Assembly: GCA_900088475.1 (NCBI GenBank)
Contig: FLMG01002041.1
Span: 1 to 34,113, forward strand
Direction of reading: 5' to 3'
Source: Hyphochytrium catenoides
Lineage: Eukaryota; Protista; Hyphochytriomycota
DNA: 34,113 bases
Part shown: positions 804 through 34,113 of the stretch, piece after piece
Numbering within the stretch: position 1 is the first letter of the stretch
How the letters are laid out: each line of letters begins with the position of its first letter
Notes under the pieces: model-generated
Database searches by the model: none
What the model was told of the DNA's origin: nothing
Seen by the model: the letters and a program-made list of their open reading frames with translations, nothing else
Translations under genes and position numbers: made by a program

Positions 804-874
804 TGCATCTGCCGGGAATCGAACCCGGGACACCTCGATGGCAACGAGGTATTTTACCACTAAACTACAGATGC
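804..874 (-). tRNA. tRNA-Gly (anticodon GCC), copy 1
   Basis: Minus strand reads GCATCTG TA GTTT AGTGGTA AAAT A CCTCG TTGCCAT CGAGG TGTC CCGGG TTCGATT CCCGG CAGATGC A. This gives a full cloverleaf with 7-bp acceptor stem, GCC anticodon and TTCGA T-loop, no intron and no encoded CCA. Confidence 0.97.
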
Positions 875-2960: not shown

Positions 2961-3031
2961 TGCATCTGCCGGGAATCGAACCCGGGACACCTCGATGGCA
3001 ACGAGGTATTTTACCACTAAACTACAGATGC
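2961..3031 (-). tRNA. tRNA-Gly (anticodon GCC), copy 2
   Basis: Identical 71-nt sequence to 804-874, with its own T5 run (AAAAA on + at 2950-2954). Confidence 0.97.
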
Positions 3032-8284: not shown

Positions 8285-8405
8285 CAGCAGAGAGAGACAG
8301 AGAGGCAGTGAGACGAAGAAAGAGTAAGGCGATTGGGGAAGAGAGAGAGAGATGGCAAGCACGAAGAGTTTAGACAGAGAGAGAACGAGAGAGGGAGGAA
8401 GTGAA

Positions 8406-8437
<32 letters not shown>

Positions 8438-8575
8438 AGTGAAAGAGAGAGAGAGAGAGAGAGACAGAGAGACAGAGAAAGACAGAGGGAGAGAGGGAGA
8501 GAGAGAAAGAGACAGAGAGAGAGAGGGGGGGAGGTGAGTTAGAGGAGAGAGACAGAGAGCGAGAACAACAGAGGA
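8285..8575. repeat. GA-rich compound microsatellite (GA/GACA/GGGA)
   Basis: Long run of gagagaga, gacagaga and gggaga units. Confidence 0.9.
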
Positions 8576-20105: not shown

Positions 20106-23100
20106 CTAGTAAACGCCCCAGAAGTCATTCGTCTCATGCGCGGGTGCATCCCAAACGAAGCTATTGCTGGCGTGCTTCACCTCGCCTACGCCAGGCGGAC
20201 ATCCTGTGTGCAAAGAAAGAGGATCTTCACTGCCATCTCCTAGCTTATTATAAAAAAGCGCAGCCGTCAGACGCCTGCTTGGAACGGCAGCGCCGTCTAG
20301 GCAGTAAGGCAAGGTGTTCTGTTATGGACAGCACGTTATTAACCTCGACTAAGCCCCATAAAGAGCACACAACAAGAGCCTTACCTCAAGCTCGGAGATG
20401 TTCGCAGAGTAAGGACGCGGAGTATTAATCTGCGCCTTCGGAAAGACCGTTTCTCCCCCGATGCGGACATCACTCAGATAGAGGAAGATAGTGGCAAACC
20501 GGTTGGGCAGAATTAGAGGCACATAGGCAGGGATGCTGCAAGGCAAGAAGGTTGTTAAGCAGGAGACCATTGGTCAAAGGCACCAAATAGCTTGTAGAGA
20601 GTCGAAACTTTCAAGAGTCACCGCTAAAGAAGTAAGACATGACTAAGGGCTAAGTGATACAATCAAAAGACGGAAGCATAGAGGATTGGAGCATTCCGGG
20701 GAAGTAGTGCCATAGTAGGAGGTGTTTAGGGGAGAGAAGAACCAGCTTTAGATCCACTAGACACAGAGGTGATTATCAGGGTCTTCACACCTATACTGAA
20801 AGGCAGGTCCGCCCTCTCTTGCCAGAGTTGTCGTTAAGATCTTGAAGATGCGGAAGTCTTTGATCAAAAGTTTGCTCAGGCCTTTGGGGCCCTCACCGAT
20901 GGCCACGGAGAAATTGGACCGAAGTTGCTCCGATATCCCTTCAGCTTCCCATAGATCAAGATAGAACATCATCCTCTCCCCTATGGCGGTCACGAAAACC
21001 CTATCGTATCGTGGATGCAAAGGGCCATCCGGCTGACAGAAGGGGATGCGAAGGACGAGCAGTAGTGAGTAAGAAGAGATGACCGAGGGAAGGGAAGAAG
21101 AAAGTGGAAGCGCATACGAGGAAGGGGTTAGCCACTTAGGTGGAAATGACCTTCAGTGTGGGGCGGCAGTCGTTGCCCAAGCTGGCCACCTGGTTTCGAG
21201 CCCAACGGATCCAGCGGGTCAACTGGGAGATGGGGTGGGCACGCTTCCCATCATAGGGTTTGGGGCTGGAAAGTATGCGTCAGCATTCGACAGATGGCTC
21301 TCCCCCTTACTCTACGAAGCAGCCTATGACTTCTGCTCTACCATCCTCCTGCTTATTGGATGCCCTCTGTACTCTATCTCTCTATGCTCTATATGCCGGC
21401 ACCTGTATGCAGGAACAAGTTGGCTGTCTGCGGAGACTCTCCATACTTCTTCCAGATATTCATTGACCCATGGAAAGGCTTCTACTAAGGTGCGTACAAT
21501 GTTCCTTTCTCTATTCTCAAGTTTCTCTTTAAGCTGCGAGATATCCCCGTTAGAGGTGACACTTAAAAGCTTCCTTGCTTTTGTGATTATGATGCCTCTT
21601 ACCCAGACCGCCCAGGTTTCTGGCAGTAATTTGGGATGGGCTGCGGTAAAGCGTGACAGGAGCGCCCATTGAAAGCCCTCGAGATCCAGAGGCTGGGGAT
21701 ATAGCTCCTCTCCTGCAGCCCAGCGAACGGGGTGAGCTGGTTGACTTGAAAGTGGCAGACAAGTGCTAGGGCGTCTGAGAGCTTAGAGAAGAATGACACA
21801 GCCTGATGAAGGCTTAGAACGATCGCAGGATGATGTAGCAAGACGAGTAACGAGGAATGCGTGGTCCTGGGTAAGTTATATATAGCAGCGGAGTTGATGT
21901 CCCAGGAGATGTTGCCCCTTCAAATGTGGTCATCCTTACCCTCTTGGACCACCTTGGCTAGGCGGCCTCGATAGGTCAGCACTAAACTTTGAGCCCACTG
22001 TGCCCAGTCAAGGTATCTTCTCCAGTCTGAGCTGAACGCTATCTGCCGGTCCGGGATGATGTCCGGCTTCTCAAAGTAGTCTGTATGCTTGGTATAGTAC
22101 TGACCAGACAAATAGCGGACGTACTGCAGCCGTTCAGCATAGCCTGTTTGCAACGAAGGCAAAGGAGCACTAACTCTTTAGGATCACGATAAGGAGCTGG
22201 GTAGAAGGACAACCTCTTTACCTGGGTTTGGCAGCCTTAACAGATGGGTGCTTCGGAACTGAAAGTCTCGCGTGAGGTTCGATGGCGGAAGGAAAGCCGT
22301 GTGACTGGTGCGATACTTTGCCACCTTCATTTTATTCTCTCCTGGCTCCACCACGACTGATTGCGCAAGGTGAGGGGCCCCTGACAAAGCAACAAACCTT
22401 AGCCTTCTTCCAGCTTTCTGCCTCCAGCAGCAGGAGCAGCGGGGTTGAACTTACCTTCCGCTATAATGGCTTCTGCCTCCCGGTCCGTAAAGAATCCATC
22501 AATTTGGAACACCTTTGGGGCCAGGGATACGGTCCGCATCACTACTCCGTCCACTTCTACGACATAACCAGGCCTTATACCCGGCCAAACCCAGTTCTGC
22601 CCGTCGAGAAGTAGGTAGATAATGTTCTTCGAAGCGGCGATGTCTTCAGCCGACTTGATGGGCTCACCGTACAGAGAGTAAAGCCGGAAGCCTAATGACA
22701 GGTATCTGCGGTCAATCAACGCGGTGGCTCCGAAGAGCTCTCCTAGTTCGTAGAGACAGTCTTTATGGAGGACAGGATCCCAGAAGATCAAAGCCCCGAT
22801 GTTTTCCCCGTTCTTCAAGACAAGAGCCCGATTCTTGGAGAGCAGTTCAGCGTACGGTCGGTCAATAACCTCGTTCACGTCCACTCCAGCTCCTGAGATG
22901 AGAGTCCCCAAAGACAGCAGAGCAAGTCAGTGATGGTTCGTGAAGCGATGCCTCTAAAATGAGTACTTACCTATGAGGACAGGGGCTGATGGACATCTCC
23001 TGCTGCGTGTAGTGAGCTGAGTAGAGGGACTGGCCGTCCAGTAGTGCTGGCCATGCTGATCCCAATGATTGCGAGCGTCCTGTGAATAGTGACCAACTTT

Positions 23101-23409
23101 GGAGGAGATTGGCGACTTCTCCCTTGGCTCCGTGATGGAGTCATCCGTAGGAGATTCAGAGGGAAGCAACTGATTCGTCTCATAAGCGTCTGCTCCATCG
23201 GATAGGAGCTCCAAGGTGCTGGAGGACGAGCTAAGCTGGTGGGCATCATGGTGCCCAGAGGGCCACACAAGGAGCGTTGTTGGCACCTTGCCCCAGGCGG
23301 ATAGGAGAGCAACGAAGGCTGGTAACGCAACCCCAAGCCATAGCTGGGCCCTCTGGCCACTCTTCTTGCCACTAGTCTTCTTTGGTGATGGAGCTTCTTT
23401 CCGCTTCAT
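20106..23409 (-). CDS. P4H: Prolyl 4-hydroxylase (2OG-Fe(II) dioxygenase), type II membrane-anchored, ~10 exons, with a large internal insertion
   Basis: N-terminal basic segment plus TM helix (LWLGVALPAFVALLSAW), then LLDGQNWVWPGIRPG, TVSLAPKVFQIDGFFTDREAEAII, YRTSHTAFL, ERLQYVRYLSGQYYTKHTDYF (HxD at 22079-22087), NRFATIFLYLSDVRIGGETVFP, AALFYN, SLHTGCP (distal His) and KHASNSFVW (2OG-binding Lys). All catalytic residues of plant/algal-type P4H are present. Confidence 0.93.
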
Positions 23410-23967: not shown

Positions 23968-24098
23968 ACGAAAGAGAAAGGTCAAGGAGAAAGAGAGAGA
24001 GAGAGAAAGAGAGGGAGAGAGAAAGAGAAAAAGAAAGAGAGAGAGAAACGAAGAGAGAGAAATAGAGAGAGAAGAGGTGGGAGAGAATTGGAGAGATG
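23968..24098. repeat. GA/GAAA purine-rich microsatellite
   Basis: gagagagagagaaagagagggagagagaaagagaaaaagaaagagagaga... Confidence 0.85.
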
Positions 24099-26712: not shown

Positions 26713-29700
26713 TCAGAGATCCTTCCAGACTAAGACGGCAGCGTAGACAAGCCGATAAGTCTCTCCAAAGAACAGGCAGGGCTGACCGTCCTTGCATTGC
26801 TTGACATTCACAGTCTTGTCAATCTTAAAATAGCTGTCTTTTGTCAGATCATTGTCGTTGGACATGACGATGTCCGCATCAGTGGTCTTAGAAGCACCAT
26901 GTAGGCAGATGTCCAACCTCGTGTCAGTGAAGGTGCCCTTAGCGGAGCCTTGGAAGTCCAGGGCTTTAGAAGTGAAGGAGGTCGTCAGATCGTACTTCAT
27001 TTCAGCCAGTAAGCCATTGAACTGAGCCGACATTGTCCCCTTGAACTGACACAGGTTCTCCACTGCGTCGAGTTTGACGAAGCCCGCCCCGGGCTTGAGG
27101 TCTGGAGATGTGTACTTGCTGCTACAGAGCTTCGCAAACTTACGGAGACTCTCAATCTGCTCTGGAGCTGCGTTGTAATAGTCCTTCTTGGCCACGTAGA
27201 CAGAGATCTCAACCAAGCGAGGGATGGCCTGATCCCCTGCAGGGCCTGGTGGACCTCGTGCACCAACGTCGCCCTTAGGACCAGCAGGTCCTGCTGGTCC
27301 GGTGTTACCAGTAGCTCCTTTAGGTCCTTCGGGGCCTGGAGCACCGTCCTTTCCAGGCGCGCCTGGAGCCCCTTTCTCTCCCTTCGGTCCGTCTGCACCA
27401 TCCTTACCAGGGGCGCCCGCCGGCCCAGGAGGACCGGTGGGTCCAGCGTATCCGCGTAATCCTGCAGGACCAGGGGGTCCAGCGGGCCCGGTGGCACCTG
27501 GTAAGCCAGTAGGTCCTGCGTATCCACGTTCACCTTGAGGTCCAGGGGCACCAGGGGCACCTGCAGGGCCAGTAGCACCTATAGGGCCGACGGGACCAGG
27601 CGGACCAGTTGGTCCAGCAGGTCCGGTAACTCCTTGGTAGCCTGGCGGCCCTGCAGGTCCTTTCTCTCCATCCTTCCCATCCCGACCATCTTTGCCGTCC
27701 TTGCCATTCTTACCCGCAGGACCAACCTCTCCCTTGGGCCCAGCAGGTCCTGGAGCTCCGTCCTTGCCATCCTTGCCAGGAGTTCCTACTGGACCTTGTG
27801 GTCCGGGAGCTCCCTTCTCTCCGTCCTTGCCATTGTAGCCGCGATCACCCTTCTCACCCTTTGCGCCTGGAGCTCCAACTGGTCCCGCAGGACCTGCCGG
27901 CCCTGTGGGTCCTTGATAGCCTCTGTCACCTTGTGGGCCCTTAGCTCCCACGGGTCCTGCCGCTCCTTGAGGTCCCTGAGGTCCAGGAGTTCCGTCTTTG
28001 CCTGGAGCACCAGCTGGGCCTGAAGTTCCAGTGGCACCTGTTGTGCCTGGCGCACCTGGAGAGCCAGCGTCACCTTTTGGCCCCTGTGGGCCAACAGGGC
28101 CGGGCAGTCCGACGTCTCCCTTAGGTCCTTGCGGTCCCGCCTCTCCTGTCGCTCCTGCGGCTCCTGGGTAACCTCTTTCTCCCTGAGGGCCCTGAGGCCC
28201 AGCCTCGCCTGTAGCACCAGATGGGCCTTGGTAGCCTCTCTCTCCCTGAGGACCTTGAGGCCCAGGAGCTCCTGTAATACCTGGTTCTCCCTGAGGTCCA
28301 GGAGACCCTTTCTCGCCCCGCGGCCCTTGAGCTCCTGGCGTGCCAGGAGCACCGTCCAAACCTGGGGTGCCATCGATACCCTTGGGACCTTCAGGACCCA
28401 TAGGGCCGGTGTATCCTCGCTCTCCCGGTGGCCCCTGAGGTCCTGGCTGGCCGTCAGCACCCGCTGGGCCCGTTGCCCCCACCGTACCAGGAGCGCCAGG
28501 GGATCCAGCATCGCCCTTCGGCCCTTGAGGTCCAGCTTCTCCTGTTGCGCCAGCTGGGCCTGGGTATCCCCTCTCTCCCTGAAGACCCTGAGGTCCAGTT
28601 GCCCCTGGGGTGCCATCCTCTCCCTTAGGACCAGGATATCCTCTCTCCCCTTGAGGACCTTGCGGCCCAGTCTCTCCAATGGCACCAGCGGCACCAGGAG
28701 CTCCAGGGATGCCAGCGTCGCCTTTCGGGCCTTGCGGTCCAGTCTCACCTGTAGCTCCATTAGTCCCTGGGAGGCCTGGGTATCCCCTCTCTCCTTGTAA
28801 GCCTTGAGGTCCAGCGGGTCCTGTGTCGCCCTTCTCGCCTTTTGGTCCCTGGGGCCCGGGAGCTCCTTCGTATCCTTTCTCTCCTTGAGGGCCCTGAGGT
28901 CCAGGAAGTCCGTCCTTCCCTGGAGCGCCGATCTGCCCGGGATATCCTCTTTCTCCCTGTGGTCCTTGAGGTCCGACATCGCCAGTAGCTCCAGCTGGGC
29001 CTGGGTTACCGGTATCACCCTTGGGGCCTTGAGCTCCAGTCTCTCCCGCTGGACCTTGTGGTCCAGGGTAACCCATCTCTCCTCTGCGGCCCTCTGGTCC
29101 GGGCTGACCGTCAAGACCTGCCGGCCCTGGTACGCCAGTGGCACCTGGTGCACCAGTGTATCCTTTCTCTCCCTGAGGACCTTGAGGTCCGGGAACGCCT
29201 GGTGTCCCATCGGCTCCCTTTTCGCCAGGATAACCTCTCTCACCCTGCGGTCCTTGTGGCCCAACTTCTCCAGTGGCTCCAGTAGCACCAGGCGCTCCTT
29301 GATATCCTCTCTCTCCCTGTGGCCCTTGGGGTCCGATTTCTCCAGTTGGACCTGGGGCACCGGGGTAGCCTCTCTCACCCTGTAAGCCCTGTGGCCCTGC
29401 GGCACCAGTGTCTCCCTTGTCTCCCTGAGGACCCTGTGCTCCTGGCAGCCCATCTTTTCCAGGCGCACCGTCCTGGCCTGGGTAGCCTCTGTCGCCATGT
29501 GGTCCTTGAGGGCCTTGCTCCCCAACAGGGCCTGCTGGTCCGGGGTTACCATTGTCTCCTTTGGGTCCTTGAGGTCCAGGTAAGCCTGGCTGTCCGATAT
29601 CTCCTTGGGCACCCTGTGGGCCTTGTGGGCCTGCCTGACCTGTCTCTCCTTTCGGCCCTTCAGGTCCTACTGGGCCTGGCGAACCATTCTCTCCATGGTA

Positions 29701-32700
29701 GCCTCTCTCACCCTTGGGCCCTTGTGGACCAGGCTGTCCGTCTTTTCCTGGAGTGCCATCCTGACCAGGATATCCTCTCTCTCCTTGTGGGCCTTGAGGC
29801 CCTGCCTCGCCAGTAGCACCCACAGCACCAGGATAGCCAGTCTCGCCCTTTGGTCCCTCTGGTCCGGGCACGCCAGGATATCCTCTTTCTCCTTGAGAGC
29901 CTGGAGACCCAGTCTCTCCTGCAGGTCCCGCGACTCCAGGTGATCCGGTATCGCCCTTAGGACCTTGAGGGCCTTCTGGACCACTATCTCCTTTCTCGCC
30001 CTGAGGACCTTGAAGTCCAGGTTGACCATTTGTGCCCGGTGCCCCGTCCTGGCCGCGATAGCCTCTTTCTCCTTGTGGGCCCTGATGTCCAATGTCACCC
30101 TTAGCTCCAGCTGATCCTGGATAGCCAGCTTCTCCCTGAGGACCTTGAGGTCCTGGAGCGCCAGGAGCACCAGTCTCCCCCTTGGGACCCTGCGCACCGT
30201 CCTGTCCGCTCGGCCCAGGTAAACCTTGGTATCCTCTCTCTCCCTGTGGCCCTTGGGGTCCTGCAGATCCACTGTCTCCCTTCTCACCCTTTGGGCCTTG
30301 AGCCCCAGGCTGCCCATCCTTGCCATTGTATCCGTCCTTCCCTGGAACTCCAGCCTCACCCTGAGGTCCTGGATAACCTCTGTCTCCCTGTGGACCCTGG
30401 GCTCCTGGCTGACCATCAACTCCCGCGGGACCTGGAGCTCCAGTTGCGCCGGTTGCCCCTGGATAGCCTTGTTCTCCCTTGGGGCCTTGAAGCCCCGGGG
30501 TGCCTGGGTATCCCGTCTCTCCTTGAGGTCCTTGAGGTCCAGCGGGACCCACAGCACCAGTGTCTCCCTTTGGTCCTTCAGGTCCGATGGCACCAGGATA
30601 ACCCCTGTCTCCCGGAGGGCCTTGCGGCCCAGGATGACCATCCTGGCCTGAGACGCCTTGAGGACCTACTGCTCCGTCTTGTCCAGGTGCGCCTGGGTAG
30701 CCTCTTTCTCCCTGTGGACCCTGTGGACCGATCTCTCCCGTAGCTCCAGTGGCACCTGGAGCTCCAGGACTTCCTGTGTCACCTTTAGGGCCCTGAGGTC
30801 CAGTCTCGCCCGTGGCACCGATACCTCCATCAGCTCCAGGATATCCTTTCTCTCCCTGTGGTCCTTGGGGTCCTACGGGTCCCTGAGGTCCAACCTTCCC
30901 TTCCGGACCTTCTGGACCTAATGCCCCTGGATAGCCTCTTTCTCCCTGCGGGCCTTGAGGGCCAGGATGGCCGTCGACACCAGCAGGACCGGGATCTCCT
31001 CTCTCTCCGTGTGGCCCTTGAGGTCCTGGTTTGCCGGCAGCACCATCCTTTCCATCTTTGCCTGGACTTCCATCTCCTCCTTTCGGACCGGAAGAACCTC
31101 TCTCTCCTTGTGGCCCCTGAGGACCAGTCTCGCCCTTAGCTCCAGTTGGACCAGGGGCGCCAGGGTATCCGTTTTCTCCCTTAGGTCCTTCTGGTCCTGG
31201 AACACCTGGATATCCCTTCTCCCCCTGAGGGCCCTGAGGACCTGGGTGACCATCAACTCCAGCAGGGCCTTGCGGTCCAGGTTCTCCTGGTGCTCCATTG
31301 TATCCTCTCTCGCCTTGAGGACCTTGAGGTCCAACTTCTCCGGGTGCTCCAACTGCACCGGTGGCACCGGGAGTTCCTGTCTCGCCTTTCGGTCCTTCAG
31401 GTCCTGCTGGGCCAGGATAGCCCCTCTCTCCCTGAGGGCCCTGCGCTCCTTGCTGGCCATCATTCCCATCGAGACCATCCTTGCCGGGGGAACCTTGTGA
31501 TCCTTGTGGTCCTTCAGGACCGGGGGCACCAGTGTATCCTTTTTCACCTTGCGGACCTTGGGAACCAGGTTGACCATCGGCACCAGCAGGGCCAGGATAT
31601 CCTCTTTCTCCTTGAGGGCCCTGAGGACCAACAGCACCAACCTCACCAGTATCTCCCTTGGAACCTTGAGGTCCTGCCTCTCCATTCGTGCCAGCTGGAC
31701 CTGGGTAGCCTCTCTCTCCCTGCAGGCCTTGAGGCCCAGCTGGGCCGATGTCTCCCTTATCTCCCTGAGACCCTGGAGCGCCGGGAAGCCCATCCTTCCC
31801 AGGAGTACCATCTTGGCCGGGGTAGCCTCTCTCTCCCTGTCGTCCTTGAGGTCCCACGGGCCCAGGCGGACCCGTTGCTCCTTCAGGTCCTTGAGGACCT
31901 GCTTGCCCTGGGTAGCCTCTTTCTCCTTGCTCTCCTTTGGCGCCATCCTTCCCGTCATGACCATCTTTCCCATCCTTTCCGTCTTTGCCTTTATCTCCCT
32001 TCGGACCCTGAGGACCTGTCTCACCCCTAGCTCCAGGACCGCCGGGAGTACCGGGGGCGCCCTTCTCACCCTGTGGTCCTTGAGGTCCAGGCTGTCCGTC
32101 TTTACCAGAAGTTCCATCCTGTCCGGGATAGCCCCTCTCTCCCTGAGGGCCTTGAGGTCCAGCTAGACCAGGCAGTCCTTGATCTCCTTGCGGTCCTTGA
32201 GCTCCAGGGAGGCCAGGGCTTCCAGTGTCTCCCTTTGGCCCCTGAAGGCCTTGCTCACCATTGACTCCGGGTGCTCCAGGTGCTCCGGTGTCTCCTTTAG
32301 GGCCAGGATAGCCTTGCTCGCCCTGAGGGCCTTGAGGCCCGACAGCTCCAGTCGCTCCAGGAGTACCAATAGCGCCAGCTGGGCCAATCTCTCCCTTCGG
32401 CCCCTCTGGGCCTGGTAATCCAGGGTATCCTTTCTCTCCCTGAGGGCCCTGAGGTCCTTCTCGACCTTCCTTCCCATCAGCCCCAGCAGGCCCTGGAGGA
32501 CCTTCAGGTCCGGGGGCGCCTGGGTACCCAGTTTCGCCCTTGGGTCCATCTGATCCAGGAGCTCCTGGGTACCCTCGCTCACCGTGAGGCCCTTGAGGGC
32601 CAGGTTGTCCATTAACTCCCTGAATGCCTTGGTCACCTTTCTCACCCTGAGGCCCTGGTGGCCCCGGCTGTCCAATAGCACCTGGCTGTCCATCGGCACC

Positions 32701-34113
32701 TGGAGCGCCAGCATCTCCCTTTTCGCCGTGGTAACCTCTCTCTCCTTGTGGCCCTTGAGGACCAGTCTCACCAGTAGCTCCAGGGGCGCCGGGAGCACCA
32801 GGATATCCAGTTTCTCCCTTTGGCCCTTGGGGACCTACAGCGCCCGGAGACCCAGGCTCCCCTTGAGGTCCTTGGGGTCCAGCGGTGCCAGGATATCCTC
32901 TCTCCCCGTGNNNNNNNNNNNNNNNNNNNNNNNNNNNNNNNNNNNNNNNNNNNNNNNNNNNNNGGCTGGCCATCCTTACCAGGTGTCCCGTCTTGACCGG
33001 GGTAGCCTCTCTCGCCCTGGACCCCCTGTTGCCCTTGGGGCCCGACAGGACCCATCTCTCCCTGAGGTCCCTGAGATCCTGCAAGACCAGGATATCCTCT
33101 CTCACCATCCTTGCCTGCTGGGCCTTGTTCGCCTTGTGGTCCTTGAGGCCCAGGAACGCCAGGGTAACCAGTATCTCCCTTGGCTCCCTGAAGCCCCGGG
33201 TGGCCATCAGCCCCAGGAGCCCCCGGCGCTCCAGTGTCTCCTTTGGGTCCAATGTCGCCTTTATCGCCCTGAGGTCCTTGGGGCCCTATTTCACCAGTAG
33301 CTCCAGCAGCTCCAGGGGCGCCTGGGTATCCTCTCTCACCTTGAGGGCCAGGAGGTCCTGACTGTCCATCCTTCCCAGGAGCACCGTCCTGACCAGGGTA
33401 GCCCTTCTCTCCTTGTGGGCCTTGCTCACCTGCCTCACCCTTTGGTCCCGCTGAACCAGGGTAGCCTCTCTCGCCCTGAGAACCTTGGGGCCCTATTTCG
33501 CCGGCAGGACCAGGCTGACCTGTCTCTCCCTTTGGCCCTGGGTTACCCGGACTTCCGTTCTCGCCCTTGGGTCCTTCGGGTCCAGCTGGTCCTGGTTGTC
33601 CAACTGCACCGTCATGGCCGTTGGGTCCAGGTGGACCCTGCTCACCCTTATCACCTTTGTATCCCTTCGGTCCTTGAAGTCCAGTGGAACCTGGAGGGCC
33701 TTGCAACCCTGGGACTCCTGGAACTCCGTCTAGTCCTGCCGGACCCTGAGGACCTTGAGGACCGGACGGTCCCTGCTCTCCAGGGGATCCCGGATAGCCG
33801 TGCGGCCCTGCAGGTCCCTCAGGCCCCGGCAGACCAGGGCTCCCATCTTGTCCCTTAGGACCCTGAGGGCCCATCTCGCCCGTTGGTCCAGTGGGACCAG
33901 GGTAACCCGTATCGCCCTTTGGACCTTGAGGTCCTGGTTGTCCGTCCTTTCCGGCGGCTCCTTCTTGTCCTGGAGTTCCTGGGGCACCAGGATATCCCGT
34001 CTCTCCCTTAGGACCTTGAGGTCCGATACCTCCGGGTGCGCCGGCTGGCCCTGGATATCCTGCCTCTCCTTTAGGCCCTGAAGGGCCGGTCTCCCCTGCA
34101 GGTCCTTGTGGCC
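26713..34113 (-). CDS. Giant collagen-like protein (5'-truncated by the window end): >=~760 Gly-X-Y triplets plus ~172-aa C-terminal globular domain
   Basis: Continuous Gly-X-Y reading from the window end (..[20 protein letters not shown]..) to GPPGPAGDQ at ~27229, then a non-collagenous domain ending [14 protein letters not shown] at 26713. The two listed ORFs (32768..33874 and 26713..33252) are one gene whose frame changes only inside the N gap. Confidence 0.95.
32911..32963. other. Assembly gap (53 N) inside the collagen gene
   Basis: Run of n characters, with collagen triplets in register on both sides. Confidence 1.

What the first reader, a model, noticed from the sequence alone, without database searches (positions are those of the whole stretch)
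27229..34113. Exceptionally long, apparently uninterrupted triple-helical domain
About 6.9 kb encodes roughly 760 triplets (~2,290 residues) with Gly at every third position. I saw no interruption apart from the N gap, and the gene continues past the window. Fibrillar animal collagens have ~338 triplets (~300 nm); at ~0.29 nm per residue this rod would be at least ~650 nm. Repeated peptide units use varied synonymous codons, so it is not a recent DNA tandem array and looks maintained by protein-level selection. Frequent KGE/KGD sequences are known helix-stabilising charge pairs.
Basis: partly seen in the sequence, partly recalled or inferred. Interest (0 to 1): 0.8.

Follow-up and report, generated by a model that had tools for sequence, protein, structure and literature searches.

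The report
Giant unbroken collagen in a protist
A probable water-mould relative carries one intron-free gene for a collagen-like rod of at least 770 Gly-X-Y triplets (about 0.66 micrometre) without a single break, ending in a domain with no detectable relatives; long protist collagens were already catalogued, so this is an extreme example, not a new kind.

Summary
The gene lies on the minus strand. Gly sits at every third residue for 631 triplets (27229-32907) and 126 triplets (32966-34111). The frame shift at the N gap is an artefact of the estimated gap length. Public short-read contigs of the same organism bridge the gap with about 106 letters. These restore the frame and the Gly phase, giving 770 unbroken triplets in the window, and the helix continues beyond it.

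The helix is followed by a 171-residue C-terminal domain with five Cys and a stop at 26713-26715. This domain has host-like codon usage and no detectable relative. Mis-assembly is unlikely. Only one exact repeat of 31 nt or more exists, and DNA repeats are 60-73% alike.

Several features fit a real, selected triple helix:
- Pro makes up 28% of X and Y positions.
- KG[E/D] is 3.6-fold enriched.
- None of 40 contig-versus-window differences touches a Gly.
- GPP triplets cluster at the C-terminal end.

A P4H-like gene lies 3.3 kb downstream. Expression, the N-terminus, hydroxylation and trimerisation are untested.

Longer collagens are known (annelid, Coccomyxa, bacterial), and a 2021 survey catalogued protist collagens. 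The scan already found another collagen gene elsewhere in this genome (s1-367370) and read this same stretch once more (s1-371084).

The parts
32964..34113 (-). Upstream part of the collagen exon: 126 perfect Gly-X-Y triplets (32966-34111) plus partial triplets at both ends. The gene start lies beyond the window.
   Evidence: Gly in 100% of one phase and no stop. X1 contig record 8 covers it and runs 1274 nt further.
32911..32963 (-). Assembly gap of 53 N. Its true content is about 106 nt of collagen coding sequence (12 triplets plus the completing codons).
   Evidence: X1 and X2 contigs bridge it with 53+15+35+5 = 108 letters between 32908 and 32964; frame and Gly phase are kept.
27229..32910 (-). 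Main part of the collagen exon: 631 perfect Gly-X-Y triplets (27229-32907).
   Evidence: Pfam Collagen PF01391 scores 178.9 bits against a cut-off of 27.2 on the last 495 residues.
29150..30750 (-). Zone with a decayed 288-nt (32-triplet, 96-residue) period, a trace of old tandem duplication.
   Evidence: families D9 and D10 with spacing 288 and 60-70% nt identity; non-Gly identity 0.34-0.44 at lag 96 against about 0.13 at neighbouring lags.
27229..27375 (-). C-terminal end of the helix, enriched in GPP triplets. It is a candidate nucleation clamp.
   Evidence: 5 of the 10 GPP triplets lie in the last 48 of 631 triplets, where 0.76 would be expected.
26716..27228 (-). Non-collagenous C-terminal domain of 171 residues with 5 Cys, mostly beta by prediction. 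It is a candidate trimerisation and nucleation domain, and an orphan by sequence.
   Evidence: It is in frame with the helix, with 0 stops against 5 and 13 in the other frames. GC3 is 0.67, like the neighbouring gene's exons. No Pfam match, no hit in 1.84 billion representatives, none by word search, none in PDB and none in the Atlas. AF2 pLDDT was 33-35.
26713..26715 (-). Stop codon (TGA) of the collagen gene.
20106..23409 (-). Neighbouring multi-exon prolyl 4-hydroxylase-like gene on the same strand, 3.3 kb downstream. This is context: the candidate modifying enzyme.
   Evidence: Exon ORFs carry P4H-type motifs and an N-terminal hydrophobic anchor. Pfam 2OG-FeII_Oxy_3 is weak (E 0.016). Exon 20349-20570 hits P4H chains 3itq, 5hv0, 6tp5, 7zsc and 2jig (best E 0.0014).

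Best explanation
This is one real, intact, intron-free nuclear gene on the minus strand of a diploid protist. The organism is probably the hyphochytrid Hyphochytrium catenoides. The gene encodes a very long collagen-like chain: an unbroken Gly-X-Y domain of at least 770 triplets (at least 2310 residues, about 0.66 micrometre as a triple helix). The start of the domain lies beyond the window. It is followed by a lineage-specific 171-residue C-terminal domain containing Cys.

The proposed mechanism is inferred. Three chains are brought into register by the C-terminal domain. The helix nucleates at the adjoining GPP-rich end and zips towards the N-terminus. It is held by Y-position (hydroxy)proline and by many interchain Lys-Glu/Asp pairs. 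Proline hydroxylation would be done in the secretory pathway by a membrane-anchored P4H such as the one encoded 3.3 kb downstream.

The product would be a long extracellular rod with one globular end, serving as a fibrous wall, coat or adhesive matrix component. The 62 Tyr, mostly in G-[E/D]-[R/K]-G-Y motifs, are candidate sites for oxidative cross-linking.
For: Shown:
- The Gly phase is perfect over 757 read triplets and is kept across the bridged gap.
- The ORF stays open over 7.4 kb while the other frames carry 13 and 74 stops.
- Pfam Collagen scores 178.9 bits.
- Pro makes up 28% of X and Y positions, close to the metazoan median of 29.9% and far above the SAR median of 0% (bioRxiv 10.1101/2021.10.08.463732).
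- KG[E/D] is 41 observed against 11.4 expected, z = 10. Such pairs are the folding and stabilising code described in PMC11923368.
- Of 40 differences between public contigs and the window, none alters a Gly codon at positions 1-2, where about 9 would be expected if neutral. All 6 changes in Gly codons are synonymous.
- GPP clusters next to the C-terminal domain.
- The tail is coding: GC3 is 0.67, GC2 is 0.37 and it has no stop.
- The assembly is sound. Contigs from two runs tile 28385-34113 colinearly. The only exact repeat of 31 nt or more (29303-29334 = 30230-30261) coincides with the contig breaks and leaves a single possible order. A 139-nt contig at half depth marks a heterozygous bubble.
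- A P4H-like neighbour is present.

Organism: the run years, the study structure and the contig totals of 84-102 Mb fit the H. catenoides project, which had GAIIx and HiSeq data, a 65.7 Mb assembly and a diploid genome (PMC5795050).
Against: - No RNA run holding the stretch was found, so expression is untested.
- The N-terminus and any signal peptide lie outside the window.
- The C-terminal domain gave no confident model (pLDDT 33-35) and a low language-model recognition score. Its role in trimerisation is therefore pure inference.
- Third-position composition in the collagen part (GC3 0.37) differs from the tail and the neighbouring gene (0.6-0.67).
- The bridging contigs come from the same study as the assembly, so they are not independent samples.
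- The first joint in the gap is 'between: not known'.
- The organism name rests on circumstantial fit and on earlier scan notes.
Confidence: 0.68

Rival explanations
1. Assembly artefact: several shorter collagen genes, or collapsed or expanded repeats, were joined into one long reading frame by a short-read assembler.
For: The assembly is from short reads and has an N gap inside the gene (finding; PMC5795050). Contigs of paralogous collagen genes match short stretches at 90% or more and then diverge (loose ends at 28449, 29974 and 32164). Logan contigs break at several places.
Against: DNA-level repeats are only 60-73% alike, and only one exact repeat of 31 nt or more exists. A single two-copy repeat in a linear path allows only one order. 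X1 and X2 contigs overlap by hundreds of bases across each other's breaks, for example 30232-31984 with 31217-32733. Both bridge the gap in frame. Depth is even at about 20-26 in X1. The excess depth at 28398-28595 fits a paralogue match of only about 40 nt. The Gly phase is unbroken across every contig junction.
Confidence: 0.06
2. The gene is of viral or bacterial origin, by giant-virus integration or horizontal transfer, rather than an old host gene. It could be a relic rather than a working matrix protein.
For: It is intron-free in a genome that averages 3.64 introns per gene with 228-bp exons, and that carries NCLDV insertions (PMC5795050). Giant viruses and bacteria encode long collagen-like proteins (PMC11923368; general knowledge). 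The collagen part has unusual third-position usage. The intron-free Trichodesmium collagen was proposed to be a transfer (PMC2443231).
Against: The tail in the same ORF has host-like codon usage. The flanks are ORF-poor with an intron-containing P4H gene and are not virus-like. The stretch shows about 0.8% differences and a half-depth bubble, like the heterozygous diploid genome, whereas the viral scaffolds of H. catenoides have very low SNP frequency (PMC5795050). The tail has no viral or bacterial relative. Origin and present function are separate questions, since a transferred gene can still be functional.
Confidence: 0.08
3. The protein is real, but it does not form one continuous triple helix. 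It would be a flexible Gly/Pro-rich extracellular polymer, or it would form only local helices.
For: No experiment exists. Hydroxylation is unproven. GPP is rare (10 of 631 triplets) and Gln is the commonest Y residue after Pro, so thermal stability is uncertain.
Against: A disordered polymer has no need of Gly at exactly every third residue for 770 triplets, nor of avoiding Gly replacements between alleles or copies. The 3.6-fold KG[E/D] excess is specific to interchain pairs of the triple helix (PMC11923368). There is no Cys, Trp or Phe in the helix.
Confidence: 0.08
4. The gene is silent or decaying: an intact-looking ORF that is not expressed.
For: No RNA holder was listed. The protein was not found among predicted proteins by exact look-up or by search.
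Against: An ORF 7.4 kb long, with strict Gly conservation among 40 variant sites, speaks for ongoing purifying selection. The absence from protein sets is explained by the gap, the length limits of the searches and 50% clustering with other collagens.
Confidence: 0.08

Closest known systems
Non-metazoan eukaryotic collagens catalogued by Linden and King 2021 (bioRxiv 10.1101/2021.10.08.463732), including stramenopile/SAR collagens and the Coccomyxa subellipsoidea protein with over 4000 aa of Gly-X-Y repeats
   Same: A Gly-X-Y domain recognised by the collagen profile in a protist that also encodes P4H. Some of these proteins reach metazoan length and proline content.
   Different: SAR collagens in that survey have a median of 85.5 aa and 0% Pro, whereas this one has at least 2310 aa and 28% Pro. 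The survey counts summed repeats (n of 2 or more), not one unbroken run. No shared non-collagen domain was found.
Metazoan fibrillar collagens (types I-III, V, XI)
   Same: A long uninterrupted helix, about 28-30% Pro in X and Y, G-E-R-G-[aromatic]-P-G-like motifs, KGE/KGD pairs, a Pro-rich C-terminal end next to a globular C-terminal domain, and the C-to-N zipper model. The best database scores are to animal collagens at 38-45% identity, which is compositional similarity.
   Different: There are 770 or more triplets rather than about 338-344. There is no COLF1 C-propeptide. The gene has one exon rather than many 54-bp-type exons. Tyr replaces Phe. It is not a member.
Annelid cuticle collagens (Riftia, Alvinella, Nereis)
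   Same: A very long triple helix with a globular domain (PMC11766948). Gene models reach up to 8859 aa (PMC12403961). Thr is frequent in Y (9.7% here).
   Different: These are animal proteins, and no homology is shown. This genome's flanks and neighbouring P4H gene are protist-like. Their interruption pattern could not be compared here.
Trichodesmium erythraeum intron-free collagen-like gene
   Same: Intron-free, with an uninterrupted run longer than the fibrillar 'shelf' (383 against 344 triplets; PMC2443231).
   Different: It is bacterial and half as long, and the terminal domains differ.
Bacterial collagen-like surface proteins with a terminal trimerisation domain (BclA, Scl1/2)
   Same: The architecture of a collagen stalk plus a globular trimerising domain forming surface filaments, and charge-rich runs such as G-K-D-G-K-D (general knowledge; PMC11923368).
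   Different: Those stalks are tens to a few hundred triplets long and unhydroxylated. No sequence similarity of the tail to any solved structure was found.

Membership tests
Collagen triple-helix repeat proteins (Pfam PF01391 / IPR008160) | Gly at every third residue over a long run | tested here: met
   631 + 126 perfect triplets, and 770 with the bridged gap.
Collagen triple-helix repeat proteins (Pfam PF01391 / IPR008160) | Profile match above the curated cut-off | tested here: met
   178.9 bits against 27.2.
Collagen triple-helix repeat proteins (Pfam PF01391 / IPR008160) | Three chains fold into a triple helix (CD 225 nm, cooperative melting, protease resistance) | not testable with these tools
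   There are only indirect sequence signs: KG[E/D] excess, Pro content and Gly conservation.
Collagen triple-helix repeat proteins (Pfam PF01391 / IPR008160) | 4-hydroxyproline in the Y position | not testable with these tools
   Y is Pro in 23% of triplets and a P4H-like gene lies 3.3 kb away. There is no chemistry.
Metazoan fibrillar collagen | C-terminal COLF1 (PF01410) propeptide | tested here: not met
   No Pfam family on the tail at E up to 1.
Metazoan fibrillar collagen | Major helix of about 338-344 triplets encoded by many short exons | tested here: not met
   770 or more triplets in one uninterrupted ORF.
C1q/TNF-like collagens (gC1q C-terminal domain, including BclA-like) | C-terminal gC1q/TNF jelly-roll domain | tested here: inconclusive
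   No sequence match in Pfam or PDB. The models are beta-rich but have pLDDT 33-35, so no fold search was justified.
Giant-virus collagen-like genes / integrated NCLDV DNA | Lies in ORF-dense, virus-like, low-SNP DNA beside viral hallmark genes | tested here: not met
   The flanks are ORF-poor with no Pfam hits on the 10 longest ORFs. The neighbouring gene contains introns. The stretch shows about 0.8% variant sites and a half-depth bubble.

The most novel reading that the evidence does not exclude
A stramenopile 'pseudofungus' independently evolved an animal-grade collagen that is proline-rich and presumably stabilised by hydroxyproline. Its single-exon helix of 770 or more triplets would be among the longest perfectly uninterrupted triple helices encoded anywhere. 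It would be folded from a new type of C-terminal trimerisation domain and serviced by a neighbouring P4H. That would be a self-contained collagen system outside animals, giving a tractable test of how very long helices fold without interruptions.
Probability: 0.3. Interest if true: 0.65.

Novelty: new member of a known kind. Interest (0 to 1): 0.45.

Why it matters
Collagen was long treated as an animal hallmark. The 2021 survey showed that collagen domains are scattered across eukaryotes, but it left their biology untouched.

This gene is an unusually clean case:
- It has animal-like proline content.
- Its unbroken run is more than twice the fibrillar 'shelf' of 344 triplets.
- It ends in an orphan C-terminal domain that may be a new trimerisation module.
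- A candidate modifying enzyme lies next door.
- The organism is culturable and has a published genome.

The gene could serve to test how register and folding are kept over 0.66 micrometre or more. It could also test whether hydroxyproline-stabilised collagen arose more than once, and what a collagen rod does in a walled osmotroph. It might also be a source of long, interruption-free collagen for materials work.

Tried and rejected
- **Relatives of the C-terminal domain.** I searched Pfam, the word search in two length ranges (1135-3612 aa, 272-866 aa), phmmer against 1.84 billion representatives, PDB sequences and the ESM Atlas by features. All were blank. Full-length relatives longer than 3612 aa were outside the word search. 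In the 50% clustering a paralogue may be represented by another collagen that lacks the tail, so close paralogues are not excluded.
- **Fold of the tail.** Two single-sequence AF2 runs (172 aa and 135 aa) gave pLDDT 33 and 35. No fold search was run on such models.
- **Rest of the gene.** Three exact-product look-ups failed. The 1274 nt beyond the window exist in X1 contig record 8, but their letters could not be read here.
- **Whole-protein search.** It returns animal collagens (mostly type VII) at 38-45% identity. I treat this as compositional similarity, not homology. The human entries in that list were left out of the script comparison and were not pursued.
- **Antisense ORFs.** The plus-strand ORFs of 100-246 aa over 27.5-34.1 kb are antisense by-products of the G/C-rich periodic coding strand, not genes.
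- **Bacterial signals.** A scan for bacterial promoters and terminators after the stop found nothing and is not applicable to this organism.
- **Gap model.** The model uses the window's own look-alike letters (90% or more alike) as stand-ins for the contig's letters, plus the 20 bridging letters printed. It tests length and phase only, not the residues.
Full report
**What is there.** The window is ORF-poor at 45-53% G+C, except for 27.0-34.1 kb, which rises to 60-65% G+C with strong negative GC and AT skew. The only long ORF lies there on the minus strand. Translating window:26713-34113:- shows Gly-X-Y from the N gap down to 27229, then a non-collagen tail and a stop at 26713-26715. A regex count gives 631 perfect triplets at 27229-32907. 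The other two frames of that strand carry 13 and 74 stops. Above the gap the collagen frame continues in another register of window coordinates, with 126 perfect triplets and Gly in 100% of one phase. The strand is minus, so the window holds the C-terminal part of the protein and the gene start lies beyond 34113.

**The gap (tested first, as asked).**
- With 53 N the two sides are out of frame.
- One search found two DNA runs of one organism and one study that hold the stretch: X1 from 2011 and X2 from 2017.
- Their Logan contigs tile 28385-34113 colinearly, and two of them bridge the gap. X2 record 15 has 251 letters to the left of 32964 and X1 record 8 has 171.
- The joints listed for X2 read: ...32908, then 53 letters like 28652-28704, then 15 other letters, then 35 letters like 30502-30536, then CGCCA, then 32964...
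- That is 108 letters between 32908 and 32964, so the gap is really about 106 nt. With the 2 leftover bases upstream and 1 downstream this gives 111 nt, or 37 codons.
- Each look-alike piece sits in the same codon and Gly phase as at its native place. A stand-in model translates as unbroken Gly-X-Y.
- The helix therefore runs through the gap, for 126 + 1 + 12 + 631 = 770 triplets, or about 2310 residues.
- Caveats: the first joint is marked 'between: not known', and the runs belong to the same project as the assembly.
- X1 record 8 continues 1274 nt past the window end. It has further short pieces that resemble collagen-coding parts of the gene on the same strand, so the helix is longer than 770 triplets.

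**Is it an assembly artefact?**
- TRF finds no tandem array.
- Repeat families are only 60-73% alike at DNA level.
- The only exact repeat of 31 nt or more is 29303-29334 = 30230-30261. It lies exactly where the contigs break. A single two-copy repeat leaves only one linear order.
- X1 and X2 contigs overlap broadly across each other's breaks, for example 30232-31984 with 31217-32733.
- A 139-nt contig at half depth (11.6 against about 24) with three variant sites is a heterozygous bubble.
- Loose ends at 28449, 29974 and 32164 belong to contigs of other collagen genes. These match only short stretches: the depth excess at 28398-28595 corresponds to roughly 40 nt.
- I rate mis-assembly as unlikely.

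**Signs of a selected, helix-forming sequence.**
- Pro fills 28% of X and Y positions (33% of X, 23% of Y). Gln, Thr and Lys are also common in Y. There is no Cys, Trp or Phe in the helix, but there are 62 Tyr.
- K-G-[E/D] occurs 52 times. In the 631-triplet part it is 41 observed against 11.4 after shuffling X residues, z = 10. These are the interchain salt-bridge triplets shown to guide and stabilise folding (PMC11923368).
- Forty differences between the public contigs and the window split into 16 synonymous and 24 replacement changes. None hits positions 1-2 of a Gly codon, where about 9 would be expected if neutral, P about 5e-5. All six changes in Gly codons are synonymous.
- A decayed 96-residue (288-nt) period in the middle of the gene has non-Gly identity of 0.34-0.44 at lag 96 against about 0.13 nearby. 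Part of the gene therefore grew by old tandem duplication and has since diverged.
- Five of the ten GPP triplets lie in the last 48 triplets, next to the C-terminal domain. This recalls the Pro-rich C-terminal clamp of fibrillar collagens.

**The C-terminal domain (26716-27228, 171 residues, 5 Cys).**
- It is coding. It is in frame with no stop, against 5 and 13 stops in the other frames. GC3 is 0.67 and GC2 is 0.37, like the exons of the neighbouring gene. The flank beyond the stop is flat.
- It has no detectable relative in Pfam, in the word search in two length ranges, in phmmer against 1.84 billion representatives, in PDB sequences or in Atlas features.
- Two single-sequence AF2 models are beta-rich but unreliable, with pLDDT 33 and 35.
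- Its role as the trimerising and nucleating domain is an inference from position and from how other collagens fold (PMC11923368).

**Surroundings.**
- A multi-exon gene lies 3.3 kb downstream on the same strand (23409 to 20106). Its exon ORFs carry an N-terminal hydrophobic anchor and the P4H-type motifs, including H-x-D and the distal His and Lys region.
- By exon, Pfam gives a weak 2OG-FeII_Oxy_3 hit. Exon 20349-20570 matches solved prolyl 4-hydroxylases from Bacillus anthracis, human P4H-TM, C-P4H alpha-2 and Chlamydomonas, with best E 0.0014.
- The remainder of the window gave no Pfam hits on the ten longest ORFs. It holds two identical tRNA-Gly(GCC) genes.

**Organism.** Earlier scan notes name a hyphochytrid, probably Hyphochytrium catenoides. 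I did not verify this by phylogeny. It fits the runs, which comprise 2011 and 2017 data in one study with 84-102 Mb of contigs. It also fits the genome paper, which describes GAIIx plus HiSeq data, a 65.7 Mb diploid assembly with frequent SNPs, a mean exon of 228 bp and 3.64 introns per gene (PMC5795050). Against that background a single exon of over 7.4 kb is a marked outlier. The same paper reports NCLDV insertions on low-SNP scaffolds. This stretch has about 0.8% variant sites and a half-depth bubble, so it behaves like ordinary diploid DNA.

**Comparison with what is known.**
- The best database scores are to animal collagens at 38-45% identity, mostly type VII. I read this as compositional similarity.
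- Among the 116 non-human proteins of that list, the longest perfect run is 342 triplets.
- A 2008 ranking of uninterrupted runs found a shelf at 344 and a maximum of 383, in Trichodesmium (PMC2443231).
- Longer collagen proteins do exist: Alvinella models up to 8859 aa (PMC12403961), Coccomyxa with over 4000 aa of summed repeats, and bacterial chains up to 2000 triplets with many interruptions (bioRxiv 10.1101/2021.10.08.463732; PMC11923368).
- The 2021 survey already showed collagen domains in stramenopiles, with a SAR median of 85.5 aa and 0% Pro.
- This gene is not a fibrillar collagen, because it lacks COLF1, has a different length and has no exon mosaic. It is not shown to be C1q-like.
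- It is a new and extreme member of the scattered non-metazoan collagens, with an orphan terminal domain.

**Verdict.** Expression, secretion, hydroxylation and trimerisation are still to be shown. I give interest 0.45 and classify it as a new member of a known kind.

Noticed in passing
window 804-874 and 2961-3031 (minus strand): Two identical tRNA-Gly(GCC) genes lie 2157 nt apart. Only the 76-nt tRNA unit is duplicated, not the flanks. They lie about 24-26 kb from a gene with over 770 Gly codons, of which 48% are GGY. This is probably coincidence.
   Followed up: partly
window 20106-23409 (minus strand): A multi-exon prolyl 4-hydroxylase-like gene with an N-terminal hydrophobic anchor lies in tandem 3.3 kb downstream of the collagen stop. 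The exon-wise matches are weak but consistent (2OG-FeII_Oxy_3; P4H chains in PDB). Large stretches between the catalytic motifs are unexplained.
   Followed up: partly
window 27229-34111 against 26716-27228: Within one ORF the collagen part prefers A/T at third positions (GC3 0.37; GGA, CCT and GCT favoured). The tail and the neighbouring gene prefer G/C (GC3 0.6-0.67). This may reflect selection against extreme G+C or against exact repeats in the Gly/Pro codon run.
   Followed up: partly
window 28449, 29974 and 32164 (contig loose ends): Contigs of other collagen genes in the same organism match short stretches at 90% or more and then diverge. One reads ...PLALVQ directly before G-K-E-G, which is the N-terminal boundary of a paralogue's helix. 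Another changes into non-coding sequence after an AG, perhaps an intron end. The genome therefore holds a small collagen family.
   Followed up: no
window 29314-29452: A 139-nt contig at half depth carries three variant sites (29344, 29374, 29401) in both runs. This is a heterozygous bubble, consistent with a diploid genome.
   Followed up: no
window 8372-8564 and 23987-24096: There are (GA)n / (AGAG)n purine microsatellites. The first causes the strong GC and AT skew of the 8-9 kb bin. The second lies between the P4H-like gene and the collagen gene.
   Followed up: no
window 27535-34081 (plus strand): Many plus-strand ORFs of 100-246 aa overlap the collagen gene. They are antisense by-products of the periodic G/C-rich coding strand, not genes.
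   Followed up: partly
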